NCBI RefSeq assembly: GCF_006345805.1
Contig: NW_021835692.1
Location: 1-37,665, forward strand
Source: Octopus sinensis
Lineage: Eukaryota
DNA: 37,665 nt
Direction of reading: 5' to 3'
In this document: positions 11,700 to 30,640 of the stretch, one piece after another
Numbering within the stretch: the first letter of the stretch is position 1
Layout of the letters: each line of letters begins with the position of its first letter
Translations under genes and position numbers: made by a program
The notes under the pieces: model-generated
Databases searched by the model: none
The model's input: only the letters and a program-made list of their open reading frames with translations
What the model was told of the DNA's origin: nothing

Positions 11700-13890
11700 G
11701 AAAGTATACTGACAAGCGTCAGCCAAATTTTTGTGTTCGTGATAGACATCGAAAGAATAGTCACCAAATATCACACGGCCAGTCAATTGCTACAGCTCTT
11801 TAAATTGATTAAGCATATTTTTGCCGCTTCATCTCCGGTTCCCTCCCCGATTTTGCTCGTGATATTTTCTTTTCCGCCAACCTTACTGCCCTTGGGAAAA
11901 AGGACAACGGCGTGAGGCCATCGCCGTGGGCAATATTTTCCGGAGGCTCTCCGCTAAACTTCTGTGTCGAGCCATTGTTCCCTGCTTGTCCTCGAAGTTT
12001 CTGCCTGTCCAACTCGGGGTCGGCGTTCCTAACGGCTGCGAAGCTGCTGTCCACTCAATTCGTGACTTAACTGAATCATTCGAGGAGTTTATCATGGTCA
12101 AATTGGACGTTTCCAACGCATTCAATTCCATCAGGCGGGACCACCTTCTGGAGTGCTGTTGTGAATTAGTCCCTTTCGCCTATCCCCTTGTGCATCTCTC
12201 TTATGCTTGCTCAAGTATCCTTATGTTCAACGATATACCTATTTCTTCGGCCACCGGGGTCCAGCAGGGAGATCCCCTGGGTCCTGTCCTTTTTGCCTTG
12301 GGCGTTAACAGTATCGCTCACTCTGTTCGATCCCCAGTTAATATATGGTATCTGGATGACGCAACCATTTGCGGTCCCCCCGATGCTGTTTTTGACGACC
12401 TTCGTTCTATCCTCCCTTCCCTCTCGGACATCGGCCTATCTATAAACGCCGATAAATCCGAAATCGTGAACATTGCCTTAAATCCGAGTGACTTCACTGC
12501 TTCAATTTCCACGTGCCGAGGCATTCTCTCAGATGTCCGGATTACGGACAAATCAAATCTTACGATCCTCGGTGCCCCCATGGGGCCTTCTGCCCTCGAA
12601 TGCTCACTCTCTGGAAAAATTTCCCATTTATCCAAAATGATCGACAAGCTTAAAGTCATCGAGCCTCATGTGGCTCTTTTCCTCCTCCGAAACCACTTTT
12701 CCGTCCCTAAGATCCTTTACACCCTAAGATGCGCACCCTGCTTTCAAAGAGGCGACCTTCTTTCCGACCTTGACAATATCCTCAGCTCGGTACGAGCTCT
12801 CTTTGCAATCTGGCTTTCGACGATCTAGGTTGGACTCAGGCATCCCTGCCTGTACGCTGGGGCGGCCTTGGCTTGAGATCCTATTCCGATCTTGCCCTCC
12901 CGGCATTCCTATCCGCTCATCACGCTTCTCGTACTCTCTCAGACATCGTTCTTAGAAACCTCCCCGAACGGAAATTGTCTGAAGTTTACTCTGCAGCCCG
13001 TGGTCGGTGGGAGGCTCGGTTTGGTTCGAAGCTGCCCAATTCTCAATCTGCACAGCGTAAATGGGACGAAATCTCTTGTCAGGCAATCTTCGAAGGCCTG
13101 CTTCCTGTCTCCAATCAACACCGTGTCGCTTGCCTCCGTGCAGGTCGCTGTGAAGGCAGCGGTGTCTGGTTAAAGGCTCTCCCTCTCCCTTCCATCGGGA
13201 ACCTGTTGGACAAGGAATGCCTAAGAATTGCAATCTCCCTCCGTGTCGGGCTGAAAATCTGCCAGACGCACAAATGCCGTTGTGGGGGAACTGTTGACGA
13301 GTACGGTTTGCATCCCCTCGCTTGCCGGCGGAGTGCCGGTCGTGCCCCCCGTCACAGTGAACTCAACTCAGTCATACAGAGAGCCCTCGCTTCAGCAGGC
13401 ATCCCGTCAATCCTTGAACCTGTTGGATTGGATAGAGGGGATGGCAAACGCCCTGACGGCATGTCCACCTTCCCCTACGAGCAGGGGAAATCCCTTATTT
13501 GGGATTCTACCTGCTCGGACACGTTCTCGCTGGGAAATCTCGCTCTGTCCGCCGCCAATCCTGGGCACGCTTCCAGGCAGGCCGAGGAGCGAAAGATTCT
13601 CAAGTACGGCCACCTCTCCAACTCGCTGCTCTTTACTCCAATTGCCGTGGAGTCCTCCGGGATCTTCGGTCCCAAGACACTCCGCTTCCTTCGCTCGCTC
13701 GGTCGACTGATTTCAAGGACTAGTCACGATCCAAGAGAGTTTTCTTGGCTCCTGGAACGTCTGTCGATTGCTGTGATCCGAGGGAACGGCTTCGCCATTC
13801 GCGAGGCTGGTCGGGTGTCTCGTGAGGCCTTTAATTAACTTAGCTATCTTTAATTTCTTTCTTGCTTTCAGAACATAAAAAAAAATAAAA
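11700..13890 (+). mobile_element. CRE-clade non-LTR retrotransposon, 5'-truncated: RT, CCHC and RLE endonuclease, two frame disruptions, A-rich tail
   Basis: FFSANLTALGKKDNGVRP(I)AVGNIFRRL, QLGVGVPNGCEAAVH, KLDVSNAFNSIRRD, GVQQGDPLGPVLF, WYLDD; then CRCG...HPLAC...RHSELN and KRPDG...WDSTCSDT...EERKILKY; stop at 13836-13838, A-rich run from about 13878. Frameshifts near 11920 and 12790-12830. Confidence 0.9.
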
Positions 13891-13924
13891 AATTTTGGAC
13901 AAATAATCCCATTTGTATTGATTG

Positions 13925-14160
13925 GTTACGACATGTGAATAATGCCATTAACGGGTCAGGAATCGCTGCAGTTGATCGGATGACTTATTTGGGTGTGCTG
14001 TTCAACCCGTCCGGTAAGTTTGATGATCACATTGCACGTACGAAAATGCATGCAATGCAGCGACTAGGCACGTTGCGTGCTTTCCGCCTGCGAAGAAGTG
14101 CCTGGCTACGCGTGTTTAACGCCATGGTGTTACCCGTGTTGACCTATGGCAGGGATGGCA
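13925..14160 (+). mobile_element. LINE RT thumb-region fragment
   Basis: VDRMTYLGVLFNPSGKFDDHI...LRVFNAMVLPVLTYG. Confidence 0.75.
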
Positions 14161-14173
14161 AAACACTGGCACT

Positions 14174-14365
14174 TTATTATTATTATTATTAGAACCAAGA
14201 TCACCGTCCAAAACATAAAACTAATTAATCAGGTGATCCCGGCTTCTCTGAGGAGGGTCCTCAACTTTGCCCGGTGCTCCTCCTTTGTCCCGGCACAATT
14301 TCTGTGAGGGCGCGGTGGTGGTGTTTTAGGCCCTGTAGCCCCGAGGTTTCTTTTCTGGCACATTT
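14174..14365 (-). mobile_element. 3' end of a LINE with a (TAA)n tail
   Basis: About 75 nt closely similar to 31890-31970 (CACCACCGYGCCCTCAYAGAAATTGTGYCGGGAC...GCACCGGGCA), followed on the minus strand by (TAA)5 at 14174-14191. Confidence 0.7.
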
Positions 14366-14513: not shown

Positions 14514-14805
14514 ATGTCAGTTCTTAAGCATACTGTTAGTACAAAATCAAAGCAAGCTAAATCAAATGGCAGAACATTTCAAAATTCATGGATTAAAGAA
14601 TATGGATTGCTGAACACAGGTTAATATTTTATTTTTAGGAGACAAAGCTTTATGTGTGTTGTGCTCCGGCCAAATTGCTTGCCGAATATCTTCTATAAAA
14701 CGCCATTTTAGAACTATTCACAAATCATTATCTGAGAAAACTAAGGATGAACAAAGAGAAACAATTGCATTTCAGTTAAAAAAACTCTTAACAATCAGAA
14801 TAACT
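14514..14805 (+). mobile_element. hAT (SPIN/GTF2IRD2-like) transposase N-terminus with an inferred 19-nt intron at 14620-14638
   Basis: ATG at 14514; removing GTTAATATTTTATTTTTAG joins GRTFQNSWIKEYGLLNT and GDKALCVLC...SIKRHFRTIHK in frame. Confidence 0.75.
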
Positions 14806-14809
14806 CAGA

Positions 14810-14925
14810 ACAGAAATAAATCCATCAACGATCAGGAAATTAGGAGTACGCTAAGCGTGTTTAGACAAACAAGAATGCCTATAGCGTACTCCTAATTTCC
14901 GGATCGTTGATGGATTTATTTCTGT
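14810..14925. repeat. Near-perfect hairpin or MITE-like foldback: 44-bp arms, 28-nt loop
   Basis: Arms 14810-14853 and 14882-14925 are reverse complements with one mismatch. Confidence 0.95.
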
Positions 14926-15523
14926 AGTCGAATATTTATCATCTCGAGAGGAACGGAAGACTAGGGAAGGTTTATTTGGCAAATTTTCCGACAATTGCCT
15001 CATTTTAATATTATCGAATATTTAATGATTGCCTTGTGCCTGATGAGAATTTGTTAGTTTCTTTATGTCATCTTCACTATTTAAATCTCAAATCTCTTTT
15101 ATTCACAATTTGTAATTTATTTCTTTTTTGGTCAAAATATTGGAGACTGCACTAAATACCCTTTCAACTATATGTTCATGCAGCAGGAAATGGAACGCTG
15201 ATGGAATTTCGAGCACTATTATTACAAAATCTGTTAGAATATTCTATGACAAATCTAACTCGTGAGAAAATACGGAATTTTTACAGAAATGCAGAAAAAA
15301 TCATTGCAAATTGTTCGATTGGGATTCCACAATACTGTAAAACTTTTTGGCCGAGAACATTTTTGGCCCTTGAAAATATCTTGATCATTATCCGACATTT
15401 AATTTTATATATTCGATTTTTATCGGTATTTATCCTATTAGATTAGTTTTTTATTTATAAATGTTATCATGGCAAACCTTAATTTCTAGCGTGATATTTA
15501 GCATGAATGATTATTTTGTTGCA

Positions 15524-15932
15524 ATGGCTTCTTACAAGGGTTTTGTAAAAGATTGCGTTGAATATCAAATTTTAAAAAATGCTTTACATGATAAATCTCC
15601 CGAAAATCTTCCAAGGCACCGAAAATATAGACTTATAAAGAAAATGGAGAATTTCACCATTATCAATGACAGGTACTGTAAATTTGTAATAAATTTACAG
15701 ACTTTATCTTAAATCTAGTGATCCCAAGTTAGTCATATCCCTCGATGATGAAACCGAAATGGAGCTTGTGGCGAAATCATTACATGAGTTTTCACACGGA
15801 GGAGTAATAAAATTGAATATGAATGTCGACAAAGATATTTCAGTCAAGAATGACATTATCAGAAAATTTATTCGAAATTGTGAAGTTTGCAAATTTTCGC
15901 GACTTTTAAAAGTTGACCAGACTAAAAAATAG
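15524..15932 (+). mobile_element. Ginger/GIN-like integrase-type transposase, N-terminal part, with an inferred 28-nt intron at 15673-15700
   Basis: Spliced 126-aa ORF: ...FTIINDR|LYLKSS...LHEFSHGGVIKL...IIRKFIRNCEVCK (HHCC integrase zinc-binding motif). The catalytic core is absent. Confidence 0.6.
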
Positions 15933-16829
15933 TTACCAAAATTTTACTCTTTACCAGAATTTATAAAGAGCCTGGAAGTCAGCTCAAAGTCGCCGCAGTG
16001 CGTATCGAGTGGCAGTTTCCGCGGAGCACCGCGACCGAGATTCGCTGGAAGAGCCAGCTGTCTCCCTCCGGTCGTTTCCATCAATTAAATTAATTGAAGT
16101 TAATCTTAATTCAATCGGCGGCCAGACATTTATAATGACCACGCACCAGTCCACCTTGTACATATGTACTTGCAGATGTTTTCCGCAACAGCCTGTGGCA
16201 ATACTCACACCGATCACGGTCAAATTTAAGTTCCCGAAAATAATTCTTTACGAATGCTGTATTCCAATCTTTCTCATCAAAATTCGACATTATCACAAAG
16301 AAGAAGCTAGTAAATATTTTATTTACTCTTTTAAATTTTTAATAGAATATAATAAAAATTAATATAATAAATAAATTTATTGTAAATTCTAATACAGTTC
16401 TAATTTTGTTAATTTCTATTAAACATGTTAATTTCGTCTGTCCTACAATTGCTGGATTTTTAGCATACATCTGGTCGCTCTACAACGACAAATCTGTCTC
16501 TTAAGTTATGAGTATAGAATGAAAACACATCCTTCTTTTGATATACCAAAGGCCTTGGATTTTTTTCAAAATAAAAGCTTTGACAGTGGTTTTTGCTTAT
16601 TTGTTGTCTGTGTTCCCGTCCCAGATCACTTAATTTAGTTCAAATAGAAGATCTAAGGAAATAGTCCTACTCCATATACGTTAGAATTTTATCAAAAAAT
16701 AAATTCGCTGGGACCATTAAATTTGTCTTGGAATGTGCTGGATTACATTTATCTATCACATTAACTGGCATTTCAATAGATCAACCCAACAATAATTTAT
16801 ATATTTTACATTCAGACCGATATATATTA

Positions 16830-17045
16830 ATTATTAACATCGGGAAGGCCTCGGAAAACGTCCAGCACTCCTCCTGCACGATAAAGGATGCAGACCGAAA
16901 GGGTCAACAGTGCAGCCACAACGACACGTGTGCGGGACACATTGCCTGAGTCCGAGTGTGTGGCTCGAGGAGACGGACGAGACAAAAGCAGGGAACGATA
17001 AGTCGGAACATAAGCGGATGCTGAGCCCCGCAAAAGATAACGGGA
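16830..17045 (-). mobile_element. CRE-clade fragment with an in-frame internal deletion, different subfamily
   Basis: TLPLSFAGLSIRLCSDLSFPAFVSS|...LGLRQCVPHTCRCGCTVDPFGLHPLSCRRSAGRFPR, homologous to the 12.85 kb and 13.25-13.35 kb parts of the main CRE copy. Confidence 0.75.
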
Positions 17046-17394
17046 GGGTTTACATTTTATTTACCTAAATGTGATATATTATGGAATTCTTGTTGTGCGT
17101 GCATGTTCGTTTCGACTGAGCTCTGTGAAACGTTACCTGAGGGCCTACCTACGAATCAATTGAAAAGAAAAGCCAGTGAGAACGTAGATGAAGTGGCCCA
17201 ATGCCAAAGAATTTGCCTTATCTCACAACCCTTCTCCCCAAGTAGGCCACGAAGGCCTGCTTACCTTGCAAGCAGTAATCGATCAAGTCACAAGTTCCGA
17301 CAAGATTCAGTGGGCCACAGAAGTGGTTCATTCTGTCAGACAAAGATTTGGAAGGATTTCTCGCGGTGGATGGCCTCATATAACAAGGGCGTTC

Positions 17395-19400
17395 AATTGC
17401 ATTTTGAGGAGGATTATGATTGTTAAACCCATCCGCAATGTGTCAGTCTTGAGAGATGGGTGGAAGTGGAATCCAAAGAACGAAAGCCGTGTTGAGATTC
17501 AGCAAATAGGAGGAAAGGTTTTATGATGCTCAGTACTACCCGTTCTGTTATTTTTAAACCACTGAAATCAAAGAGATAGGTCGAAAAGGTCAGATGTATC
17601 TCGATTTGGTTTTGGAATAGGGATGATGGTAGATTTTTTCCAAAGCATAGGAACCAAACCATGGTTGATCGAGTATTCGATTAAATTGGTCAGGGCCAGA
17701 AAGTCATTTGGACCCAGATTTTTTAGATGGTGGATGACAAGACCATCCGGACCTCTGGCGTAAGAATTTCGCGAGTTAACAACAAGCTGCTTGGTAAGTG
17801 ATTCTGGGATGTTAATAAAGTGTGTAGAATTGACATTGGAATTATATGAGATTTTCTTATGAAACAGAGATGTTTGGGGTAGGAATAGTTTAGGCTCTAA
17901 GTTGAACTGATGTAGGAAGGTGACTAATTTTTGCATAATGACGAATTAAGATGTTAGCTTGATCCCGAAAGGATAGGAAAGATTTTTTGGACGAGATGCC
18001 GGTGGCATGTGAGAGAGGGCATGTTTGCCTTGTGTGAATTTTCTTGAGAGATCTCCAGAAAACACGGGATCCAGTATGTGGGGATATAGATGTGAAAAAA
18101 TCATTTCATTTTTCAGTTTTATGTTTTTGATTAGTTCGTCGATTTGTTTATTAATTTCTGCTAGATATTCCGCAGTTCCATTTATAGATGTCGTCGATTT
18201 GAGCCTCCTTCGTTTTTTGAATAGTTCAATGATCGGGGGAGGATAATGGAGGCCGTGATTTTTGATGAACCGCAGGGAATAATCTTTTGTGCGCAGAAAG
18301 AAGTATATTAGTAAAGAAAGCAACAGCAGCATCAAATGATTGAAAGGAGGAGCAAGAAAAGTTACTGAATATACGCTCAGTGTCATTCCTGAAGGAGTCC
18401 CATTTCCCACGTTTGTAGTTAATGTAGGTCTTCATAATTCTCTTTTTTACAGGGTGATGATTTATTTTAATTAGAATAGGATTGTGATCCGTTGGTAGGT
18501 CGTACACCACTGTCCATTTGGTGTCGAGTGCAATGTTTGGAGAACATAAGGTGATGTCAGGAGAAGTGTTTAAATCTCCAGGACGCATTGCACAGCGGGT
18601 GTGCAGAAGAGGATTGTTTAGAGTGATCAATTCTTCCGCATCAGTTATAATTTGTTGGCCTCGTTTATCAGTTTTGTTTGTGGATAGCCAAAGAGGGCGT
18701 TGAAGTCGCCACAAAGAATACAGTTTCAAGTGAAAAAAGAGGCAGTAAGTTCGGAGTATAATTAGGATCACATGACGAAATCGGGGGGATATATAAGTCG
18801 TCGAGAATAGTGGAATATCCTTTTCACAGGTGGGAAAGACCTCTAGTCGTGCTACAACGCCGAAGGTAATTCTACCCCCGGCGCGAGCGGTCTTCTTCGT
18901 CTGCGGATCCATCTCCGAAGACGAATTGCGAGTACCTAAATTGTTAGAAATTGGACGGCAAGCGACACGTTTAGGTTTCCCAACGTTACGCCAGCCGTCC
19001 TCATGGGCTACCTGAGTACTTTTTTTTCGCGATCGTTTAGCAAAACTTTTTTTCTGCTTTAAGATTGTCATTTTTGCGCATCACAGAAAAAACGAGCATG
19101 CTTGCACGCTACAATTCAACTCTCAGTAAGTTTGGTCTCACTATTCTCCACGCTATATCAATAGAGTTCGTGTGAAGAAAGTAGCGTAGGTCATTGCATT
19201 TCTTAGAGATCCCGTTAATGTTTAGTTGAAGGATGGTTAGTGTTCTAATAGATTCAGGTTTTGCTCCACATCTCCACACCGAATCAACAACAGAGTCAGG
19301 GAACGTAAGCTTGACGCTCGTAGCCACTGCCAACCAAACCGTTGACATGTTGGTTGGCAAGGAAAAGGTTGGTTCTGTTTGTTACTGAAGGAGAATCAGC
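17395..19400 (-). mobile_element. APE-type LINE (I/Jockey group), degraded: 2A-like peptide, APE, linker and RT N-terminus
   Basis: ILQLNINGISKK...DI, YIPP, GDFNA, SPDITLCS, TDHNPI, GPDGL, LWKKSTIIPIPKP, QHGFR and GFNNHNPP in order; multiple frameshifts; foreign segment at about 18800-19120. Confidence 0.85.
19250..19293 (-). other. Degenerate 2A (StopGo) motif upstream of the LINE endonuclease
   Basis: CTGTTGTTGATTCGGTGTGGAGATGTGGAGCAAAACCTGAATCT reads LLLIRCGDVEQN(P)ES if one C is restored in the CC run; it directly precedes IRTLTILQLNING. Confidence 0.7.
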
Positions 19401-19559
19401 ATCCAATCGTCTCCACGAGAAGGTGAACCACATGACGATCAAGGAAACACTAGAAAAAATCAAAGAAATCAAGGACCCCAAAAATTTAAAAAGCCAACCT
19501 GGCACCCCCTTTTTTAAATCTAACAGATATTTGTATTAAAATGATCATTAAAAAAATAT

Positions 19560-21010
19560 TTAGGTTCCTTGAGATTTTTCTTGCCTTTTAGTCTTATTAA
19601 TTCTTCGAAACGCGGTTTTTTGTTTGCTAGTGCAATTCTGAGATTGTTTTCAGGCTAAGAGAGTTTCTGTTCTTATTTTTTATACATAATAGAGATGAAA
19701 ATCCAGATTCACATAGCTAAGTTGTTGCAAATGGAATCAGAACTTCCAGTGCTTTCTTTCCAAGTTTCGGGAACCCTGCTTGCAAACCGCTCCAAAAAAC
19801 TTCTAAAGTATTTGAGCCGTACAACATTTTCAGTGATGTAGATGCTTGCAATTTAATCAAATCGTCTTTAACTTCGTTTCTATCATCCATCTTTTCCATT
19901 TTGAAAACAAATGGATTAACGATCCAGGTATCAGAATCTTCGATATTTCCGAGTAGAAAACATTCATCAAATGAATTTTTTGAACATTCAAGATTGTTGT
20001 TGATTTGTTTAATAGTTTTATCAAAAGTCAAGTCGGAATCAATAGCAACTTTATCCAACGTTGGAAAATTGGCAAAATTATTGTCTTAAATACGGCGAGT
20101 CCATAACAAAAGTTAATTCCTGAAGGTATTTAGATTGTCAGAAGCATTAATAATGCTTATCCCTTTCCCTTCAATTAAAAGATTCAACTCGTTAAGGTGA
20201 TTGAAATTGTCAGCCAAATATGCCACCAAAATAACAAAATCAGGAGATTTGATAGAATCAAGTAGTTCAGAGTTTTTTCAAATAGAAATTGCTTGATTTC
20301 AACTCTGAGAATATAAAATCTTGTTAAAACACGACCTCTTGAATGCCATCTAAAGTCAGTATGATACAAAAGAACAGTGGTGTCAGCATCATAATCAATA
20401 CATAATGCTTTGAACAATCTATGATTCAAAGCTCTTCCTCGAATAAAATTCACAATTTTGACGCATGAATTTGAAACGGTATTTAACAGAACGAATATCC
20501 ATAGCCATAGTCAAAGGCAATACTCTGGCTATCTACCAATGACCAGTTTTCTTTAGTCTTTAACAAAAAAATATTTGTCAACTTAATAGGCAAGAACTTT
20601 GATACGAGTGTATGTCGATGAAAAATACAGTGAGTAACTTTTACATCTGGAACATGTTTTCTTAAAAGGGCTGCAAAGCCCGACCTGTTCCCCAGCATAA
20701 CTGGAGCACCGTCCGTGCAAACTGATCCGATAAATTCCAATGGAATATCATTTTCATTAAAAAAAGTCTCAGGTATATGGAAAACATTTTTTACAGAGGC
20801 TTCTTTTTCGAATTAACAAGAGTCTCGGCACTTCTTCGATTTTGCAACTTCATATGCTACTTGGAATGATTCCAAATAGTAGCGGTTTGTCAATGGAGGT
20901 AAATTCATGCTTCGGAAGCGTTCCTTTAATATTGTATCTGACCCTTTTAACCTTTAAACATTCGAAATCATTTCCTGAACGTTTTATTCCCCCGTGCTAA
21001 CCAAAAAAAT
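19560..21010 (-). mobile_element. hAT (Buster/ZBED5/Charlie-like) transposase remnant
   Basis: SFQVAYEVAKSKK, SVCTDGAPVMLG, VTHCIFHRH, NFIRGRALNHRLF, LLYHTDFRWHSRG, VLIPFATTYLCESGFS; several deletions and frameshifts. Confidence 0.9.
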
Positions 21011-21169
21011 GCTTGTTCAGCTAAAATGGTTTCAAATTAGAGTTAGAAAAGATTGCATCACAAATGATGCACTGGGGTCGATCGATTCCATCAATGATTA
21101 TTTTCGTAAACCATAGTTAAAATAGTCAAGATCCCAATTAGTGAGACAAGATCCCAGTCATTCTATTAA

Positions 21170-21486
21170 AAAATTCTGGTGACGAAAAAGTTACCTTTCT
21201 ATCAGCTATCTTCAACCATTCGATCTACAAAAATGTGTTACCGTTATTATGGAAACACTAATAAGGCCGATAATGAAACCTGAAAGACCTAGAGACAACC
21301 CTGCATCTTTTAGACCGGTTTCCCTATTATGGTCCATGTCGAAAAATCCTGGAAAAGATGGTTCTTGGAAATATAAGCTAACATGGATCGGCTGAACGTC
21401 TTACTACCTGATAGGTGCCTGACAAAGTGCATCGGGATCACGTGACTATTTGTCCGGTTTCTTTGTGTTTAAATAAATAAATAAAC
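21170..21486 (+). mobile_element. Collapsed LINE: RT N-terminal motifs joined to a 3' end with a (TAAA)n tail
   Basis: LSAIFNHSI...LWKH...IMKPERPRDNPASFRPVSLL...LEKMV, then within about 100 nt TAAATAAATAAATAAA. Confidence 0.6.
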
Positions 21487-21711
21487 ACAGAGAATTCAGC
21501 ACTCATGGATAACAGTCTGATAGCCAGAGGAAGAATTCCAAGAACAGTAGGGACCAGGATTACCTAGCCTAGTTAGCTTAACTTTCTCTCTTCGTGGTCT
21601 TATGATTAAATAATAAAATGAAATAAAATTGATGATGATGAATGAATTTCCATTCTCACGATATCATAATAACTATATTTGCAAACTTGCCGTCATTATT
21701 ACCAATTACGA

Positions 21712-22429
21712 ATGTTTGATGAGGAGATGATTCAGAGTCATACAACTGCTATGGCCATCCGATATACAGGAGGTGTTGTTGTGGCTGCAGACAGCCGAGT
21801 AACTCTGCCAAGCCCTTCAAAGAAATGTATACTAGTTTTTTACTCAATTTAGGCTTTGACACAGAAAAAAAATATTTCAGTTATCAATAAATTCTGTATT
21901 AACATACAGTGGATCAGTGAACGTCGCGAAAAATCTTGTAGAACAAATTAAAAAAGAGTACACGTAATTATTAATATTTTAAACATTTAGAGATGCATCG
22001 AGAGTGGATCACATCAGAATGGAAGAGCGAATTCACGAGTTTTTAAAACCTCTAAAAATGCGAAGCGAATATATTGTAAATTTAAGTTTTCTAAATGTTT
22101 AGCGAGTCATTTTTGTAAGTTGTGACGGCGCCATGAATTATATTTCAATAATCAACCATGAAAAAATGTCATACAAAAATATCTACGATTGGTTCAGGAT
22201 CTCGACCAGCAAATAATCATGCAAACAAAAAGTTTAAATATACAATAATTTTAGTTACCCGGGCGAACATTCCACAAAAGAAGATATAATTAAATTAGCA
22301 AATGGACCAATAAAACGCGCTGAAAAATCTGACAAAAAACGGGAGGACCAATATTTAGTTAATGTTATCTATAAGATATTAGTCGTCTCTCTTTCCATGA
22401 ACGGCATCATTTTTGAAAGTTATCGATGA
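21712..22429 (+). pseudogene. Divergent 20S proteasome beta-type subunit, full length (about 196 aa), five micro-introns, three frameshifts all in A-runs (pseudogene or assembly errors)
   Basis: MFDEEMIQSHTTAMAIRYTGGVVVAADSR...KIFQL...YSGS...STIGSGS...YPGEHSTKEDIIKLA...SDKKTGGPI. Introns 21827-21852, 21964-21990, 22076-22102, 22232-22254, 22358-22382. Frameshifts at A-runs 21865-21872, 22161-22166 and 22334-22339. Confidence 0.8.
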
Positions 22430-22555
22430 TCCAAGTTTAGTTTAATGCAAAAAATTATTTTAGGTGTTTAAATAAGCGTCGGCTATTTACTGATTGATAT
22501 AAATTAAATGAATCACATTAAGAAGATATATTCGTGGCTGCTGGACTAGAGAAAA

Positions 22556-22792
22556 ATGTGGAAAAGTAAGGTGGGTTTTGTGCGGACTCCTTATGGAGAC
22601 AGAGACTGTTTCGGTATTGGGAGGGGCATCCGACAAGGCTGTATTCTATCCCCGGTACTGTTTAATATTTACAGGGAGAAAGTCATGGAGGAGTTAAATT
22701 GCGAAAATGATATCGGAATCAAGATTGGTAGCCTCAACATAAATAATCTCCGTTATGCAGACGATACTACTCTGAAACAGAGGATGGCTTGA
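22556..22792 (+). mobile_element. RTE-clade (BovB-like) RT fragment
   Basis: GRGIRQGCILSPVLFNIY...GIKIGSLNINNLRYADDTTL. Confidence 0.85.
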
Positions 22793-23554
22793 GGCAATTA
22801 ATTACGAGAGTATTGATTGCCATACCTTATGCAGTGTTTGGGGACGGTTTTGCGGTAAGTGACGGAAAGATTGAGAGTGGCAAAAATCATTGATTGACAA
22901 CTTTTATGTAGATAAAAAGATTTAAAAAGAAAAATTAAAGTTTAAAAAAAGCTTAAAAGATTTAAAAAGAAAAATAATTCAATCTCTTCCTCATAAATAA
23001 AATTGTGTTACAAAGAATGAAAATTTTAATTAAAAATAGGATTAAATTCAATTTCAAAATAAGTAGAATATACAGATTGAAGAATAAACTTACAAATATT
23101 ACAAAATGATGAAATTTCAGATAATTAAATCATTAAAAGAAACTACATCGCAAAATATCCCTTCTGAATCCAATTAAATAAAAAATAAAGATCGACCAAA
23201 TAATGTAACAAAACAACAAAGTATGTCAACCACGTGTTTACACGGGCATAATTTATTAGGTTTTCTATTAATAATTGGATAACAAAAAATTAAGATAATT
23301 TATTAATGAAAACAAACATTATTTTAATTAAAACACAATTCTACCTAGTAGCTTATAAACAGTGTAAATATTAGAGCGCATATTTCTGCGATGCTCCAGA
23401 TAGCTGAAATAAGGATACAAACAAGTGCGATCAAGATTGTTGAGGTGTCAAAAGTCGTGTTTAGTTATCTACAAATTTTCATAACCAACTGTACTCTCAA
23501 AAATGACAGTGAATGCATTTCAGAGGTAAAAATCGATTTTTAAAGTATTTTATT

Positions 23555-23708
23555 AAACGGAAACAGCAGTGTTGTCAAAATCCTTGCAAACATGGTTGAT
23601 CCACGGCGAAGACGAAAACTCCAATACGCTCCTTGACTTGCCTGCCTTAAACGGACACAAGGAAGTAGTAAAATTTCTCATTGAGAATAACGCAGTCATC
23701 GAAGCCAG
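23555..23708 (+). pseudogene. Ankyrin-repeat gene remnant (about 1.5 repeats, frameshifted)
   Basis: NGNSSVVKIL then, after a frameshift, EDENSNTLLDLPALNGHKEVVKFLIENNAVIEAR, matching the ankyrin consensus with TPLH degenerated. Confidence 0.65.
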
Positions 23709-24386
23709 GTTACTTATTTGCATGAACACAGAAATTAATTTTTTAGTAATTGGGCTAAAATGCGAACAAAAAATAAAAAGTTGTTTTCAGCTGTAGGACC
23801 GAGTGGGCTTTAATTATGTTACAATAAAAGCGGTTTGCAGTGCACTTCAAGTCTATTGGGGTTTCAGCTTTAACAAGTTTACATCATTTAATAGACCTAC
23901 GTAACTCCAGAGCTTTTGGGCCGATCATTAATTAAGATTCAGAAATTATATAAATAGACTCTACCTTATTCGGATTCTTTGACCATTGAAGGAGAGAATG
24001 GAAAACTTAAGGAAAAAATAATCTTATGAATACCAAAATGCACTAAAAATACCCTTTCTTGCTATAAAATATTTCTTACTAACAAAACTTACATAACTTT
24101 TGACAAAACTGAGAGGCTAATATGAAAACAATGCCGTTTCTATGAAATCATTCGAAAATTTATATTGGAAACAGGCATTATCTATACGTGTCTGTTCTGC
24201 TTACTTCTTGATTCTCTAATTTAGAAAGCTGTTTGATTTGATCACTATTTCACTCAATATATTGCCTTCAGAATTTTAAACGAGTCCTCAGTGTCTCCCA
24301 CCTAATGAATTGCCTAAAACTCCACAAAATAAATCCCTTCATTCTTCCCTCTGAAATAATGTGTACTTTCAGACAAAATAAATTAA

Positions 24387-25058
24387 TCAGTGTGGAGTAT
24401 TTAGTTCATTAACCAAGACACTCCGATAGGCGTCAAACCCCTCAGAAATAATACTGACTTGGCCTCCATGCACATGCCACAAATCAGTGCACACGGAATT
24501 AAGCAAATGTCTCTCGTGGGAGACGAGGACAATCCCCCCTTATAAACCAATATTGCCTTTGCCAACGCGTCCACTGACTCCACATCCAAATGGTTTGTTG
24601 GCTCGTTCAAAACAATAAAATTTGGACTACAAATTATTATAAAACAAACTTCTTTAAACACAAAGCAGCAAAAACCACTCTGCTCTTCTGTCCTCCACTC
24701 AACGTATTAATTGACTTGAGATTGGACTTCCTCGATCCATTATCCCCCACCTACACCACTCACTACTCTCCGTACTATGCAGATTCGACTAGTCATGGAT
24801 ATTGACACTGAAAGGTACTCGAATATGGGTTTGTTAGGGTAGGAGAAACACACATTGTTGAATTCAACTACCGTCAGCTCAGAGAAGGAGACCACTGGGA
24901 ACTTGAAGACCACGGGACACTCCTTCTCGAGTGGGGACACAAATGACATTTTTTGTAACATTTTTATTTCGAATTAGAAGGAGGCACTGCTGTTGTCTCC
25001 AGAGACTTCCTGCTCGACATGCAGCATTGAGACATCATCAGAAAATTGTAAATTTCGT
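24387..25058 (-). pseudogene. ABCF3: ABCF-family ATPase (ABCF3/GCN20-like) remnant with large internal deletions and two micro-introns
   Basis: RNLQFSDDVSMLHVEQEV (first ABC domain) | FKFP...FNNVCFSYP...SRICI-VGDNGSRKS | NLK | SINTLSGGQKSRVVFA...NFIVLNEPTNHLD...GG(I)VLVSH...FDAYR. Introns 24751-24775 and 24627-24649; frameshift in C6 at 24534-24539. The symbol is the best-guess subfamily. Confidence 0.8.
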
Positions 25059-25189
25059 CTATAAATATATTTAGTTATTTATATTAATTTAAATATAAAT
25101 AAATTGTATTTAAAATATGTACCTGTGTGACAACGTTTATTTAATACATTGCAATGGCCTTCATTAGAGTAGTTTTTCCCACACTATTC

Positions 25190-28100
25190 CTCTCAACCAT
25201 ATCTCCTTCCCTGCAGAAACATGTCAATGTCCTTTTGTAAGCACATTGATCTCATTTCAACCAAGATCTTTCCAAAAAATTCCTTTCGTCTCAATCTGCT
25301 AGTGAGAACGAAGATGATTGGGAGGATTTGCGACAAACCCTCCAAAACATTTATCCCTGCCTCGTCAACATGTGCCTTTAAATGCAGAAGTTCTTGGTTA
25401 ATAAAATTTGAGAATATTTCTCCAAGGATTGGAGGGAATTGCGCACGGTACAAGCAACCAGACACGCAATGTTTCCGCTGCCAGCGTTTGGACATATCTC
25501 ACGGTTCTGTACAGAAAAAGTGAGATGTCTCATTTGTGAAGGACCCGTTCGGAATGCCCTCTGACTGGAAACTACCCTACCAAGTGCATAAACTGTGGAT
25601 CCTCAGCACACATGCCCAACTATGGAGGATGTCCCTTGTCAAGGAACTTCTTAAAAAGAGATTACCTCGGAAAACTACAGATCAGTCTACTAAACTGAAA
25701 TTTGATGCGTCTTCCGCAATGAAAATACAAGAAAAAAAGATCAAAACAGGAAAAGTGAAAGTACAAAATACCTGGAAAGGATGAATCTTTAGTAAAAGTA
25801 CAAAATTTGTGGACGCTGAGGTTCAGACTGACGATATCTCTGAATCCATGTTTAACACTTCGAAAACTGCGACACCCACTATATCTACGCAAAAACCAAA
25901 ATTAAAGTTGGAACAAGCCGTAAACACAACCGAACCCAAAAAGGAATGGCATCTTTGAAACTCGGGGACACTTCTAAATCAATCCCGGGACAACCACCAT
26001 GCAACATACTGGTGGCAGACGAAAAGACAAGTGCAATTGAACTTTTAAAAGCAAAACTGGAGGATCTCCATCTTAAATCGAAAACGACGACTAAAAAACG
26101 TTTAAAAATTTATTGGAACTGGTGACGCTCGTTATGGAGGACAGTCACCAAAACTTGAGGAGATGAGTGTTTTTACGCTTATCAACGCCCGGTCAATTCG
26201 GAAACGGGCTACGGAGCTAACCTACTTGGTTAGATCGGTAAACATGGACATATTGGTTGTTAATGAAACGAAGCTTAAGGGAAAGCAGCATCACAAAATC
26301 CATGGTTTTCAGTCAAACAAAATTTGTGCGAACTGATTACATTGAAACTACTAACATCCTTTGGATGGATATCTGTAGGAGTACTCCAAAGCAATGAAGA
26401 AATATCCAAATCTTATTGAAGATTTTTCAAAATAATGAAGGAGGAATTTTAATAGAGACCTTAACGCAGAACACACATCGTACGGATGTGCTAATACAAA
26501 TCGGACGGTCATATACTCTCTGATTATCGGAGAACTGCGGCTTTAGTGTTTTGACCTCACGAGAACCAAACCATTTTCTTGTTATGGAGAGGATGTATTG
26601 GAGTTTTCCTTGTATCGGCTGATCTTGTTCATCAATGCAGCATACCAAGAATTGAGATAAACATACAAATTGAAAAACTTGATAAAATTCTCAGAGAAGC
26701 TATACTGGACTTTCTCCGATAATCTTCAATCAGAAAATACATCATGTCAAATACTAACAGAAAACCCGGATAGACGAATCTTTGGGAAAACTTATAGAAT
26801 GGAAGGGAAACCTTGAAAAGAAGCTAAGACGATGCAGTGACCCCATAGATCGTATTCGGGATAAGATTCGTACCGTGAAAATAGAGATAAATGATGTCGC
26901 AAAAAAACATTCAGACCTTGCTTGGAAGAGTCAATGCTCGAAACTGAATAAGAAAAACCCTCATTTTGGAAGGTTTTCAACATACTAAGTAATATGGAGA
27001 ACAAAGGTGAAGAGAATCCGACTAAAAACAACTGAAGGAATAGCTATCCCGCTCAAAAAAGCCCTCACATTTGCGAAGTCAACTGGCAAAAGTTCAAGAG
27101 GTGGATCGATCGACATGGTTCCGAAAGAATTTATATGTGAGGCACAGAGAAGTCTGCGAGCTAACTTGAGTTATACGGGACCACTGTGCAGAGACATAAC
27201 GTTGGAACAAACGTATGTCGCTATTATGAGCTGCAAGAACAATGCACTCGGCCATGACTACATTCCAATTACTGTATTCAAACATGCTCCAATTATTCTC
27301 CTACGATACTTGACCGCACTATACAATGCAAGCTGGAGACTTGGATGCATACCGGACTTTTGGAAAAAGTCAATCGTACGTATGATTTCAAAGCCTGAAA
27401 AATGAAGGACCGTGCAGAGAACTATCGGTCAATAAGCCTAATATGCTCAGTCTCTAAAATTATGGAACAGATTGTCTTCACAAGACTTTCGATCTTCGTA
27501 GAGGAATCAGGTGCACTTGCAGCGGAACAGTGGGGATTCCGACGAAAAAGATCCTGTGGAGATTGTTTCGGAGAACTCCATCTTGCTTAGTCTTGCAAAC
27601 AATATAGCGACTATTGCTACCTGCCTCGATGTCTAAAAATCTTTTGACAGCGTATGGCACCTTGGCCTCTTGAAAAGTGTCGCCAAAATCAAACCCGGCT
27701 CTAGAACGGTCAATTGGCTGAAGAGCTATTTATCAATGAAGAGGTCATACATATACGATGCGGAAACCGTTTGTCGGAATCTGTCGATTTTAAAAGAGGG
27801 GTACCTCAAGGCTCGGTCTTGAGCCCTCTGCTTTTTAATATTTATGTTGCTGATATTCCAAAACCGAAAGATCCTACCAGTCGTCTCATGATCTACGCGG
27901 ACGACATACTAATAACGGATCCTTCGTGGAAAAAAGACATCTTGTCGAGGAAATTAAAAGGATACGTGACAAGAGTGGAAGAGTGGTGCATATCAATAGG
28001 ACTGACACTCGCAAAAGAAAAGTGCACCGGCATTTGGATTGCAAAACAGGGAGCTAAACGAAAACCATCGAGAAACCTCTATGGGTTTACAGTAACGGAG

Positions 28101-28540
28101 AACCTGAAATGCCTTGGGGTTGAAGTTGGTTCAAAGGGTTCTTACTTCAGATACATCGACTCAAGGAGATGGAAATGCGCTCAAATTCTCAGGAGCATAA
28201 TTCACTTCTACTTTTGTCCGGAAACGTTTTTATATGTTTATAAAACGTGCGTCAAACTATTGCTTACCTACGGGTTAGAGAAATGGCATTATCGCTAAGC
28301 TCGAAAAGACGAGACGATATGCCATCAAATTGGTAAATGGACTCCAGCTGGACCAACTTATCCCTCAAGAGATGGAAAACGTGACAGTAACAGTTGGAAG
28401 TGTTTTTGAGAAAGCCTTTTCCTCTCGAATCTCTAATTAAAAAAAAGAGGGAAACAACGGAGAAGAGGCATACGTTGTCTCATTAACTTTCTCTCTCTTT
28501 TTTCGGCTTTTCCGTTTTAATAAAAAAATTCATTCATTCA
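25190..28540 (+). mobile_element. Near full-length degraded Jockey/I-group LINE (copy 2): gag-like ORF1 with three CCHC knuckles, APE, RT, 3' stem-loop, (ATTC)3 tail
   Basis: QCFRCQR(F)GHISRFC...RCLICEG...KCINCGSSAH...GCP (about 25465-25640, frameshifted); INARSI...DILVVNETKL at about 26180; GDLNA; LGHDYIP...WKKSIV; RT colinear with 5660-6705. Confidence 0.9.
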
Positions 28541-28571
28541 ATGTTTTCTTGAGATACGTCGTTGTACTAGA

Positions 28572-29228
28572 CAGGGGTTCTCAACCTTTTTAGCTCATGG
28601 GCCAAATCGATAATTAAGAATATCTTTGCGGGCCGCACAAAAAATATTTTATGTTATTAATGAAAAGAAGGCTTTAGTAAGTAATAAAAATCAATGCGAG
28701 ACTTGATTCTGTTTGGCGTCTATTATTTTGTCGAAACAGAGAGTAAAAGTCGAACACGATGTTCGTAAAAGTTGATTTAGGTGTCCATCAGTCAATCGAT
28801 TTCGATACTTTGTTTTTATTTGCGTTAGTTTGCTGAAAAAAGCTTCACATGTACACGTTGATTCGAAGACTGATGCATTTTTTTGAGCATTATCGACCAA
28901 GTTCGGATATTTCCACTGCGGAATTCGACCCCAAAAATCCAATTGTTCACTTGACTTAAATCGCGCTGTAAGTTGTAAATCTGCCTGCATTTCAATTAGT
29001 TCCAGTTGATATATGTATTTTTCCTCCCTTCAAAAACGAAAAATTTTTCCTCCCATTCGGGGTTAAATGCACGATTTTCATGAATAATTTTTCTACTTCG
29101 TTTAACACGTTTATCAGACATCACAAACAATATTATTTAAATATTAATGTACAAAATATTTAATATAAAAACAAAAAATATTTAATATTTTTTTATAATT
29201 TTAATCGGGCCGCGGTTAAGAACCGCTG
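28572..29228 (-). mobile_element. Internally deleted non-autonomous hAT (SPIN/Buster-type) with both TIRs and an 8-bp TSD
   Basis: TIRs CAGGGGTTCTCAACC (from 28572) and reverse-complement CAGCGGTTCTTAACC (ending 29228); TACTAGAC at 28565-28572 and 29229-29236 (left copy shares its last C with the TIR). N-terminal RAFNPEWEEKFF is fused to C-terminal QLELIEMQAD...FESTCTCEAFFS...QNQVSH. Confidence 0.9.
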
Positions 29229-29279
29229 TACTAGACTTTCTATTAACAAAAAATTTTTATTCTTCGCTATATTTCTGAC

Positions 29280-30360
29280 AACCCGTCAATGTCTGGTTCC
29301 CTAAAGAGCAATTTTATCCGATTCAATAATCATTTCAAAGTCTCTAAAAATGAAAAATCCATTACTGATTTTAACGACATGGTCAATTTGAAAATTCAAC
29401 AATATGGATCGGATAACGTCTATAATGCTGATGAAACCAGTGTTTTTAAAAGGCAATTTCTTCTAAAAGTGTATGTACAAAATCAAGGCCTGGAATAAAG
29501 TTGTAGAAGGATCGATTTTCATTATTAATATGTGCAAAATGTTCCGGAAAAGATAAAAGAATGCCATTGATGATAGGAAGATTTAAAAATCCTAGATGCT
29601 TCAACAATTTTAACTTTGGAAATTATGTTACGTACACATATTCGAACAAAGCATAGATGAACACTGAAATTTTATATTAAATGACTGACTGATTTTAAAT
29701 TTGAGCTGGCTAAGAAAAAAGAAAAATTTTACTTGTGACTGACCAATCTCATCAAATCATAGTCACTTTGAAGTTTATAGAAATTCTTTTTTTCCTCAAA
29801 GAACATTTTCATTGTTGCAACCAATGGATCAGGGAATAATAAAATGTTTAAAGTTGAGTTAACAGATTTGAAAATAAACAAAATAATAAAGAAAGATTGA
29901 AGCAGGAGAAAAACTTCAGAATGCAATTCATAAATCTCTCTTAAATCTGCTGCGCAATTTACTTTCTTTGCTTGAAATAACTTGACTCCCACAACCATTA
30001 TAAATTGCTTTCGGAATGCACAATTGATGAAGAAATAGATACATAACTTACAAAGATTATGAGAATAATTATGAAGATTAATTAAAAAATGTGAAATCAA
30101 TGATGCAATTTTTTATGATGGATTTCTTGAATATTGCTCTATTGAAAATGAAGAACTAGTTGAATTTTTGAAAGGGCAATCTCGAGAAGATCAAAAACCT
30201 CAACCAGTACTTGATTTTATTTAATGACTAAAATTAGGAAACAAGTGATGAAGAGGATTATGTTAAAAAAAAGTTGAGCTATTGGAAGCATTTAGAGCAC
30301 TAGAGACCATTAAAACTTACATTTCTCAAATCAAAAATTCAAATGATGATCACGAAAATA
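29280..30360 (+). mobile_element. Tigger/pogo transposase DDE-domain remnant
   Basis: NVYNADETSVF, KDR, PLMIGRFKNPRCF, KILLVTDQSH and PMDQGIIKC motifs in order, with stops and frameshifts. Confidence 0.8.
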
Positions 30361-30392
30361 TTAATTATCTGCTCATTACACACAAATGAGGA

Positions 30393-30640
30393 CTATTCCC
30401 AGGATGACCACCACCAACAGAAGACCCACAGTACATTATGCATTGTGAGTAATTGAGATGAGTTGGGGTCATATACCACAGCACCCGCAAAACCAGCACG
30501 TAGTACATTGATTATCTGAAATAGTATATTGGAGTGACCTTGTCCATGTATGTGCAGCCATATCGTTTGATTATTGCAATATCTTATTACTTTTGTTGAT
30601 TTTCAATAGAGAAAACACGCGGTCGTTAAACACCCCGTTT
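30393..30640 (-). pseudogene. PA (protease-associated) domain gene remnant, RNF13/RNF167-like, with a 23-nt intron at 30516-30538
   Basis: Removing GTCACTCCAATATACTATTTCAG joins IAIIKRYGCTYMDK and IINVLRAGFAGAVVYDPNSSQLLTM, matching the PA pattern IALIxRGxCxFxxKxxNAQxAGAxAVIVY. Confidence 0.6.

What the first reader, a model, noticed from the sequence alone, without database searches (positions are those of the whole stretch)
14620..30538. Ten inferred spliceosomal micro-introns of 19-28 nt with almost no splice-site information
Seen: removing GT...AG segments of 19, 28, 26, 27, 27, 23, 25, 23, 25 and 23 nt (14620-14638, 15673-15700, 21827-21852, 21964-21990, 22076-22102, 22232-22254, 22358-22382, 24627-24649, 24751-24775, 30516-30538) joins conserved protein motifs in five unrelated genes; most joins are exactly in frame, but some proteasome introns lie next to A-run frameshifts. 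The 5' sites share only GT (GTAT, GTAA, GTTT, GTTA, GTAC, GTCA) and I see no shared branch-point motif. Both introns of 3n length (27 nt) carry an in-frame stop. Known: introns this short occur in few lineages (for example dicyemids, Paramecium, nucleomorphs, some microsporidia), and stopless 3n introns are depleted in Paramecium. Inference: the host has a reduced spliceosome that defines introns largely by length and relies on NMD.
Basis: partly seen in the sequence, partly recalled or inferred. Interest (0 to 1): 0.7.

Follow-up and report, generated by a model that had tools for sequence, protein, structure and literature searches.

The report
Dicyemid-type tiny introns in gene relics
The ten 19-28-base segments are mostly real relics of very short ordinary (GT...AG) introns, but they sit in dead gene copies and mobile-element genes of what is almost certainly a dicyemid (a tiny octopus kidney parasite), a group already known for such introns.

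Summary
All ten segments are GT...AG on the coding strand at the stated coordinates. Joining reading frames by itself is no better than chance in this window. Seven segments have independent support: ungapped joins inside conserved ABCF and PA-domain motifs, losses of 8 and 12 bits in the Pfam proteasome score when two segments are kept, and in-frame stops in both 27-nt segments. Eight of the ten are also 77-89% A+T, against 63% in their flanks. Three are weaker: 14620-14638, 15673-15700 and 22358-22382.

The "five unrelated genes" are two mobile-element ORFs and three decayed relics: a proteasome beta subunit, ABCF3 and a PA domain. The window is dense with transposable elements.

The same locus, 99% identical and with the same introns and frameshifts, lies on an unplaced 42-kb contig of the Octopus sinensis assembly GCA_006345805.1. 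Sister contigs there carry intact animal genes with 30-91-nt introns. O. sinensis is the host of Dicyema japonicum, whose published genome matches the window in GC content, repeat load and intron size. So this is an already described feature of dicyemid genomes.

The stops in both 27-nt introns have a chance probability of 0.42.

The parts
14514..14895 (+). Transposon-type zinc-finger ORF (Spin-doc / hAT-associated type), two exons
   Evidence: The spliced ORF matches Pfam zf-C2H2_12 at residues 25-76, across the junction, with E 4.7e-5, below Pfam's cut-off.
14620..14638 (+). Candidate intron 1, 19 nt, GTTA...TTTAG, phase 1, 89% A+T
   Evidence: Removal restores the frame from 35 codons upstream to 84 downstream. 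Read-through hits a stop at intron offset 2. The two frames overlap by about 8 nt, so a single indel is an alternative. Identical in L001. Moderate support.
15503..15932 (+). Retroelement integrase N-terminal fragment (Integrase_H2C2), two exons
   Evidence: Pfam PF17921 matches residues 74-121 with E 4.9e-4, below cut-off. The match does not span the junction.
15673..15700 (+). Candidate intron 2, 28 nt, GTAC...ACAG, phase 2
   Evidence: Joins ORFs of 70 and 76 codons to give ...FTIINDR|LYLKSS.... The frames overlap by 17 nt, so an indel is possible. Weak to moderate support.
21712..22429 (+). Proteasome beta-subunit relic (pseudogene): 6 exons, 5 micro-introns, 3 one-base frameshifts
   Evidence: The conceptual protein matches Pfam PF00227 over positions 5-184 of 189, at 59.7 bits. 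It is colinear with PDB 8oix_L residues 1-185 at E 9.5e-6. The frameshifts are shared with L001. Differences between the two copies are mostly nonsynonymous, and L001 has GSGS changed to GSRS.
21827..21852 (+). Intron 3, 26 nt, GTAT...TTTAG
   Evidence: Keeping it as an insert lowers the Pfam score from 59.7 to 51.9 bits. GT and AG are kept in L001.
21865..21872 (+). A8 run: frameshift 1 of the proteasome relic
   Evidence: The frame changes between ...FDTEKK and IFQLSINS.... The same A8 is present in L001.
21964..21990 (+). Intron 4, 27 nt (3n), GTAA...TTTAG, two in-frame stops
   Evidence: Two substitutions against L001, with GT and AG kept.
22076..22102 (+). Intron 5, 27 nt (3n), GTAA...TTTAG; its only in-frame stop is the terminal TAG
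   Evidence: Keeping it costs only 1.4 bits. Support comes from the stop codon.
22161..22179 (+). A6 / A5 runs: frameshift 2 of the proteasome relic
   Evidence: The frame changes between ...IINHEK and KISTIGSGS. Identical in L001.
22232..22254 (+). Intron 6, 23 nt, GTTT...TTTAG
   Evidence: Keeping it lowers the Pfam score to 47.7 bits, a loss of 12.0.
22334..22339 (+). A6 run: assumed frameshift 3
   Evidence: It is needed to read ...SDKKTGGPIF, which matches the D-x3-GG spacing of proteasome beta subunits.
22358..22382 (+). Candidate intron 7, 25 nt, GTTA...TTAG (ambiguous)
   Evidence: It works only together with frameshift 3. An uninterrupted ORF from 22238 to 22426 reads through it and scores 58.1 bits against 59.7.
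24387..25290 (-). ABCF3-like relic (pseudogene)
   Evidence: Best matches are animal ABCF3 proteins at up to 56% identity. A stretch matching ABCF1 residues 371-437 is missing, and about 250 aa are missing between HVEQEV...GDNSSA and LEKECPVVFKF. Walker A reads GDNGSRKS. There are frameshifts in the first Walker A and at a G-run. The 5' end appears cut off by a LINE, judged by eye from the translations.
24534..24539 (-). G6 run (C6 on the + strand): frameshift in the ABCF3 relic
   Evidence...LVYKGG then changes frame to IVLVSHERHLL....
24627..24649 (-). Intron 8, 23 nt, GTTT...GTAG
   Evidence: It is the top-scoring of 875 stop-free excisions. It lies inside an ungapped 96-residue alignment to human ABCF1 438-533.
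24751..24775 (-). Intron 9, 25 nt, GTAC...GTAG, unusually G-rich (48% A+T)
   Evidence: Removal gives SRICI|VGDNGSRKS, ungapped against ABCF1 MDSRICIVGPNGVGKS. It is one of four equivalent 25-nt excisions and the only one with GT..AG.
25059..25147 (-). Extra intron not in the finding: 89 nt, GTAT...TATAG
   Evidence: Removal gives RNSVGKTTLMKAIA|IRNLQFSDDVSMLHVEQEVSGDNSSA, an ungapped 40-residue match to ABCF3 proteins.
30396..30583 (-). PA-domain fragment (relic)
   Evidence: Pfam PF02225 scores 28.3 bits across the junction. The upstream and downstream reading frames are broken.
30516..30538 (-). Intron 10, 23 nt, GTCA...TCAG
   Evidence: The PA score is 28.3 bits spliced and 18.2 bits with the segment kept. 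Neither exon alone gives a hit.

Best explanation
The window is a transposon-rich stretch of a dicyemid genome, Dicyema japonicum or a close relative living in Octopus sinensis. It carries two mobile-element ORFs and three decayed copies of host genes: a proteasome beta subunit, ABCF3 and a PA-domain protein.

The ten segments are ordinary U2-type GT-AG introns of the ultra-short class already described for dicyemids, or their fossil remains in the pseudogenes. In the live parent genes such introns would be removed by the normal spliceosome through intron definition. The cues would be a minimal 5' site (GT plus A or T), high A+T content, an A-rich patch about 8-10 nt before the 3' end as the likely branch region, a 3-4-nt T run, and YAG.

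Shown here: the GT-AG ends, the exact homology-restoring joins, the A+T contrast, the pseudogene state, and the presence of the same locus in octopus-derived sequence data.

Inferred: the dicyemid identity, actual splicing in RNA, and which residue is the branch point.
For: GT..AG in 10/10.

Exact joins: ABCF, PA domain, proteasome, and stops in both 27-mers. A+T is 0.78 against 0.63 in the flanks, P about 2e-8. The 3' pattern is A-rich at -10 to -8, T at -6 to -3, then YAG.

Source organism:
- The GC-rich LINE ORF at 11863-12825 is 96% and 85% identical to proteins labelled Octopus sinensis that sit only on small unplaced contigs.
- L001, from contig VCDQ01007817.1 of GCA_006345805.1, aligns to window 2093-22861 at 98.9%. 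Differences are mostly substitutions, and the introns and frameshifts are shared.
- Sister contig L002 carries a lamin-tail intermediate-filament gene with introns of 30-91 nt. It also carries a peptidase M3 gene whose NCBI model XP_036355262.1 needs introns of 32, 73, 32, 30 and 37 nt, confirmed by exact protein look-up.
- L003 shares repeat fragments with the window.

Published data:
- D. japonicum was collected from O. sinensis. Its genome has 36.7% GC, 49% repeats, many LINE copies, a mean intron of 38 bp and 1.24% heterozygosity (PMC6736024). The window has 37.6% GC.
- Dicyema introns measure 26.2 +/- 1.9 nt (PMC2222250), with a median of 27 (PMC6543705). [quoted passage not shown]
- The ten window segments average 24.6 nt.
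Against: No dicyemid sequence could be compared directly, so the identity rests on host association, intron size, composition and fast-evolving animal genes.

No RNA evidence was available for any of the ten junctions.

All three host-type genes are dead copies, so their introns may no longer be spliced at all.

Intron 9 is not A+T-rich. Introns 1, 2 and 7 have alternative readings.

A 490-nt tract with 9% divergence between the two copies of the locus is unexplained.
Confidence: 0.85

Rival explanations
1. The window is true octopus chromosomal DNA, and the micro-intron genes reached it by parasite-to-host transfer from dicyemids. On this reading it is neither a dicyemid genome nor a contaminant contig.
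For: The same locus and related contigs are deposited and annotated as Octopus sinensis.
Against: All matching contigs are small and unplaced: 42, 53, 232 and 509 kb. They carry apparently intact (no frame breaks seen in the parts read), fast-evolving animal genes with 30-91-nt introns over tens of kb, which is not what octopus genes look like. The AT-rich LINE of the window has no relative above 35% identity in a database that contains octopus proteins. No octopus-type sequence was recognised in the window.
Confidence: 0.04
2. The window comes from a myxobolid myxozoan, the other animal group with introns under 30 nt.
For: Myxobolids have median introns of 22-27 bp and reduced splice signals (PMC13644364).
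Against: Myxobolids alternate between fish and annelid hosts, whereas this locus turns up in an octopus assembly. The one myxobolid whose GC is quoted in the papers read, H. salminicola, has 29% GC, against 37.6% in the window. The same paper describes myxozoans as having relatively few transposable elements, though content varies among species.
Confidence: 0.03
3. The segments are not introns. They are chance GT...AG stretches next to ordinary frameshift and nonsense decay in pseudogenes.
For: ORF-bridging GT...AG excisions are as common as for other dinucleotide pairs. The genes do carry true frameshifts. Introns 1, 2 and 7 each have an indel or read-through alternative.
Against: For introns 8, 9 and 10 the exact excised length is fixed by ungapped alignment inside conserved motifs, and a GT..AG pair sits exactly there. 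The A+T enrichment has P about 2e-8. Intact genes on sister contigs use the same kind of intron, and NCBI's gene model depends on them.
Confidence: 0.03
4. The host is some other octopus-associated eukaryote with short introns, for example a chromidinid ciliate of the renal sac.
For: Ciliates are known for introns of 15-35 nt (PMC2222250 and PMC13644364).
Against: The standard genetic code fits: LINE ORFs of 321-388 codons are free of TAA and TAG. The ABCF relic is closest to animal ABCF3. A sister contig encodes an intermediate-filament protein with a lamin tail. The transposons are animal-type LINE, hAT and gypsy-integrase elements.
Confidence: 0.02

Closest known systems
Dicyemid micro-introns. 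Dicyema acuticephalum: 26.2 +/- 1.9 nt, n = 16 (PMC2222250). Dicyema sp.: median 27 bp, about two thirds under 30 bp (PMC6543705). D. japonicum: mean 38 bp (PMC6736024), with signals reduced to GTa...AG (PMC13644364).
   Same: Length (19-28 nt, mean 24.6). GT-AG ends with little else at the 5' site. An A-rich patch upstream of the AG. A tail of longer introns (89 nt here, 61-91 nt on a sister contig). GC near 37%, LINE-rich repeats, very divergent proteins, and association with Octopus sinensis.
   Different: The introns here lie in pseudogene relics and transposon ORFs, not in working genes. The 3' ends in this small sample show a clearer T run plus YAG than the genome-wide logo is described as having. 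Dicyemid identity is inferred, not shown by direct sequence match.
Myxobolid myxozoan micro-introns (Henneguya, Thelohanellus, Myxobolus; PMC13644364)
   Same: Animal lineage, median intron 22-27 bp, 5' signal reduced to GTa, weakly conserved A residues before the AG.
   Different: Myxobolids are cnidarian parasites of fish and annelids. This locus co-occurs with octopus sequence data, and its composition and repeat load fit Dicyema better.
Paramecium introns (20-35 nt) with depletion of stopless 3n introns
   Same: Similar length range. The 3n introns seen here all contain in-frame stops: two in the window and two on a sister contig.
   Different: The window uses the standard genetic code and animal genes. 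The sample is far too small, since two of two is expected 42% of the time. No evidence was obtained on NMD.
Nucleomorph (Bigelowiella, 18-21 nt) and microsporidian short introns
   Same: Very short GT-AG introns in reduced genomes.
   Different: Those genomes are compact and poor in transposons, whereas this window is mostly transposons and pseudogenes. The length range is also different.

Membership tests
U2-type GT-AG spliceosomal intron | GT at the 5' end and AG at the 3' end on the coding strand | tested here: met
   10 of 10. Kept in the second copy L001 for introns 1-7.
U2-type GT-AG spliceosomal intron | Exact removal restores the reading frame and colinearity with homologues | tested here: met
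   Strong for introns 3, 4, 5, 6, 8, 9 and 10. Weaker for introns 1, 2 and 7.
U2-type GT-AG spliceosomal intron | Branch-point adenosine and pyrimidine tract upstream of the 3' site | tested here: inconclusive
   A at -10 to -8 in 5-7 of 10, T at -6 to -3 in 6-9 of 10, Y at -3 in 10 of 10. With n = 10 no single motif can be fixed.
U2-type GT-AG spliceosomal intron | Absent from mature RNA | not testable with these tools
   No transcript data could be reached. The proteasome query found no protein in the 5.8-billion-sequence collection.
Dicyemid ultra-short introns | Length distribution centred near 26-27 nt with a minority of longer introns | tested here: met
   19-28 nt, mean 24.6, plus one of 89 nt. 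Sister contig: 30-37 nt and 61-91 nt. Compare PMC2222250 and PMC6543705.
Dicyemid ultra-short introns | Source organism is a dicyemid | tested here: inconclusive
   The same locus is in an Octopus sinensis assembly contig. D. japonicum is collected from O. sinensis. GC, repeats and gene divergence fit. No direct comparison with a dicyemid assembly was possible.
Myxobolid ultra-short introns | Source organism is a myxozoan (a fish and annelid parasite) | tested here: not met
   The locus and related contigs occur in cephalopod sequence data.
Paramecium-type surveillance of intron retention (stopless 3n introns depleted) | 3n introns carry in-frame stops more often than composition predicts | tested here: inconclusive
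   Both window 3n introns have stops, but the chance probability is 0.42.
Functional 20S proteasome beta subunit | Uninterrupted reading frame under purifying selection | tested here: not met
   Three frameshifts are shared by two copies. Differences between the copies are mostly nonsynonymous, and L001 has GSGS changed to GSRS.
Functional ABCF3 | Two complete ABC domains with intact Walker A motifs | tested here: not met
   Large internal deletions, two frameshifts, Walker A reading GSRKS, and an apparent 5' truncation by a LINE.

The most novel reading that the evidence does not exclude
Dicyemid micro-introns may be under the same translational surveillance as Paramecium introns, so that introns whose length is a multiple of three and that lack an in-frame stop are selectively depleted genome-wide. 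That would make NMD-type quality control a general companion of ultra-short introns, in animals as well. The four 3n introns seen here (two in the window, two on a sister contig) all carry stops, which is compatible with the idea but not significant.
Probability: 0.4. Interest if true: 0.4.

Novelty: already known. Interest (0 to 1): 0.2.

Why it matters
As a finding about introns it adds little. Ultra-short GT-AG introns with weak signals have been documented in dicyemids since 2007-2010, at genome scale since 2019, and compared with myxozoans in 2026.

Its practical value is indirect:
- Even dead gene copies in this genome keep recognisable micro-introns, which is useful when annotating such genomes.
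- Tracing the locus exposed contigs and RefSeq proteins labelled Octopus sinensis that most likely belong to its dicyemid parasite. This matters to anyone using that assembly for cephalopod gene or transposon studies.

Tried and rejected
1. Assembly error as the cause of the A-run frameshifts. Rejected. An independent copy of the locus differs mainly by substitutions (132 substitutions in 153 difference events across the two alignment blocks) yet shares all three shifts. Long LINE ORFs with T7-T8 runs are intact.

2. Alternative splice choices that would remove the need for frameshift 1. Worked through by hand on the sequence; none kept the frame.

3. Ciliate or altered genetic code. Rejected on the stop-free LINE ORFs and the animal-type genes.

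4. Finding transcripts or close homologues. The proteasome query gave nothing. The AT-rich reverse transcriptase gave at most 35% identity. ABCF gave at most 56% identity, all to ordinary animal ABCF3.

5. Looking for micro-introns in the hAT transposase at 19720-20812(-). The frame breaks there have no usable acceptor, so it is a decayed element.

6. Rfam scan for snRNAs in the window. Only a tRNA-His was found.

7. Supplementary logos of the 2026 paper. Not held in the library.

Full report
**Observation.** All ten segments begin with GT and end with AG on the strand of the gene they interrupt. Their lengths are 19, 28, 26, 27, 27, 23, 25, 23, 25 and 23 nt. The window is eukaryotic, 37.6% GC with no gaps.

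It is dominated by mobile-element remains:
- four LINE reverse-transcriptase or endonuclease blocks;
- hAT transposase pieces, one identified by a Pfam hAT dimerisation domain and one only by reading the sequence;
- a gypsy-type integrase fragment.

Rfam and ARAGORN find only a tRNA-His at 31561-31632(-).

**Is it more than chance?** Frame-joining alone is not. An unbiased scan found 204 GT...AG excisions of 18-30 nt that bridge two ORFs of at least 30 codons. The rate is 0.080, against 0.070 +/- 0.008 for the other dinucleotide pairs. The case therefore rests on homology and composition.

- *ABCF relic.* The conceptual protein aligns to human ABCF1 residues 306-370 and 438-533 with only one 1-residue gap, well away from the junctions, and both junctions lie inside these blocks. 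For 24627-24649 the GT..AG excision is the best of 875 stop-free candidates. For 24751-24775 it is one of four equivalent 25-nt excisions and the only one bounded by GT..AG.
- *PA domain.* It scores 28.3 bits when 30516-30538 is removed and 18.2 bits when the segment is kept as an insert. Neither exon alone gives a hit.
- *Proteasome gene.* The spliced, frame-corrected protein matches Pfam PF00227 over positions 5-184 of 189 at 59.7 bits. It is colinear with a solved proteasome beta chain.
  - Keeping 21827-21852 costs 7.8 bits and keeping 22232-22254 costs 12.0 bits.
  - The two 27-nt segments cost little, but they contain two and one in-frame stops.
- *Composition.* Eight of the ten segments are 77-89% A+T, against 63% in their flanks. 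Only 4.1% of all 1,971 GT...AG segments of this size in the window reach 77% A+T; seven of the ten segments do and an eighth is at 76.9% (P about 2e-8).

Three segments are less secure.
- 14620-14638 and 15673-15700 lie in transposon ORFs where the two frames overlap, so a single indel would also restore the frame. The Pfam matches there are below cut-off.
- 22358-22382 needs an assumed frameshift at an A6 run. An uninterrupted ORF reads straight through it and scores nearly the same.

**What the genes are.** Two are mobile-element ORFs: a Spin-doc-type zinc finger and an integrase zinc-binding domain. The other three are dead copies.

- *Proteasome gene.* It has three one-base frameshifts at A runs.
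- *ABCF3-like gene*:
  - about 250 and 67 residues are missing internally;
  - there is a frameshift in the first Walker A and another at a G run;
  - the second Walker A reads GSRKS;
  - the 5' end appears cut off by a LINE.
  - It also contains an 89-nt intron at 25059-25147(-), whose removal gives an ungapped 40-residue match to ABCF3. So not all introns here are tiny.
- *PA fragment.* Its reading frames are broken on both sides.

**Where it comes from.** Neither the AT-rich reverse transcriptase nor the proteasome relic has a close relative among 5.8 billion public proteins. The ABCF relic is closest to ordinary animal ABCF3, at no more than 56% identity.

The GC-rich LINE at 11863-12825 does have close relatives. 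It is 96% and 85% identical to proteins annotated as Octopus sinensis, and these sit only on small unplaced contigs. Fetching one of them gave L001, from contig VCDQ01007817.1 of GCA_006345805.1 (42 kb). L001 aligns to window 2093-22861 at 98.9%.

- The differences are mainly substitutions, so L001 is an independent copy of the same locus.
- It has the same seven introns with GT and AG intact, and the same three proteasome frameshifts. The frameshifts are therefore real, not assembly noise.
- The window runs 14.8 kb past the end of that contig, so it comes from another assembly.

Two further contigs of the same assembly look like the same organism.
- L002 (232-kb contig, 34.6% GC) shares the LINE. 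It carries a lamin-tail intermediate-filament gene with introns of 30, 61, 88 and 91 (or 22) nt.
- L002 also carries a peptidase M3 gene. NCBI's model for it, XP_036355262.1, requires introns of 32, 73, 32, 30 and 37 nt, which I confirmed by exact look-up of my spliced translation.
- L003 (509-kb contig) shares several repeat fragments with the window.

These are animal genes with introns far shorter than those of cephalopods (the comparison with cephalopod intron size rests on my own knowledge).

Octopus sinensis is the host from which Dicyema japonicum was collected. The published D. japonicum genome has 36.7% GC, 49% repeats with many LINE copies, a mean intron of 38 bp and 1.24% heterozygosity (PMC6736024). 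The simplest reading is that the window is dicyemid DNA and that the octopus assembly carries dicyemid contigs.

**How it works.** These are canonical GT-AG introns of the ultra-short dicyemid class.
- The 5' site is GT followed by A or T.
- The 3' end has a pyrimidine at -3 in all ten, T at -5 in nine, and A at -10 to -8 in five to seven.

Splicing in RNA, the branch residue and recognition by intron definition are inferred. In the pseudogenes the introns are probably fossils.

- A reduced spliceosome cannot be assessed from this window. The 2026 comparative paper found that U2 snRNA and U2AF are retained in the myxozoan case.
- The NMD argument rests on two introns. Simulation with the introns' own composition gives a 0.42 probability that both would contain an in-frame stop.

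**Comparison and novelty.** This is the known dicyemid intron architecture (PMC2222250, PMC6543705, PMC6736024, PMC13644364).

The myxobolid alternative fails on host association. The ciliate alternative fails on genetic code and gene content. The "not introns" alternative fails for at least seven of the ten.

**Unexplained.** Differences between the window and L001 pile up in 21760-22247. There are about 45 substitutions in 490 nt, biased to transversions and mostly nonsynonymous. There are no differences at all between window positions 20178-21759 and 22248-22567. Gene conversion from another relic copy is a guess.

Noticed in passing
L001 (GCA_006345805.1 VCDQ01007817.1), L002 (VCDQ01003444.1), L003 (VCDQ01001009.1); window 2093-22861: Unplaced contigs of the public Octopus sinensis assembly look like DNA of its dicyemid parasite rather than octopus. 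RefSeq proteins on them include XP_029657117.1, XP_029656011.1 and XP_036355262.1 ('mitochondrial intermediate peptidase-like'). One contig is 99% identical to this window. Another carries animal genes with 30-91-nt introns.
   Followed up: partly
window 21760-22247, against L001 19640-20126: There is a sharply bounded tract of about 9% divergence (about 45 substitutions, 17 transitions and 28 transversions, mostly nonsynonymous) between two otherwise 99.4-100% identical copies of the locus. It coincides with exons 1-4 of the proteasome relic. Both copies keep the same frameshifts. The cause is unknown.
   Followed up: partly
window 11800-14200: A LINE with 51.6% GC sits in a setting of about 35% GC. 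It has two long ORFs (11863-12825 and 12774-13835) in different frames. Copies 85-96% identical occur on other small 'octopus' contigs.
   Followed up: partly
window 14810-14853 / 14882-14925: A 44-nt inverted repeat, 98% complementary with a 28-nt spacer, lies at the 3' end of the zinc-finger ORF, and the ORF reads into it. It may be a hairpin or a small foldback element.
   Followed up: no
window 2457-2630 (-): A RING-H2 finger fragment (Pfam zf-RING_2, 28.8 bits) in which several zinc-binding cysteines appear replaced. It is on the same strand as the PA-domain relic at 30396-30583, 28 kb away. Both could be remains of one PA-TM-RING (RNF13-like) gene, or unrelated relics.
   Followed up: partly
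window 25059-25147 (-): An 89-nt GT...AG intron in the ABCF3 relic that the finding does not list. It shows the gene mixes tiny and ordinary short introns.
   Followed up: yes
window 5539-6702 and 27399-28540: Two copies of one AT-rich LINE family lie in the same window, about 90% identical over 1.15 kb. The first has an intact 388-codon reverse-transcriptase ORF. No relative above 35% identity exists in the public protein collection.
   Followed up: partly
window 31561-31632 (-): A tRNA-His (GTG) gene scoring 62.6 bits is the only RNA gene found in the window.
   Followed up: no
window 22238-22426: An uninterrupted 63-codon ORF runs through candidate intron 7 into the last proteasome exon. 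The one-base shift at the A6 run and the 25-nt segment together add up to a multiple of three.
   Followed up: yes
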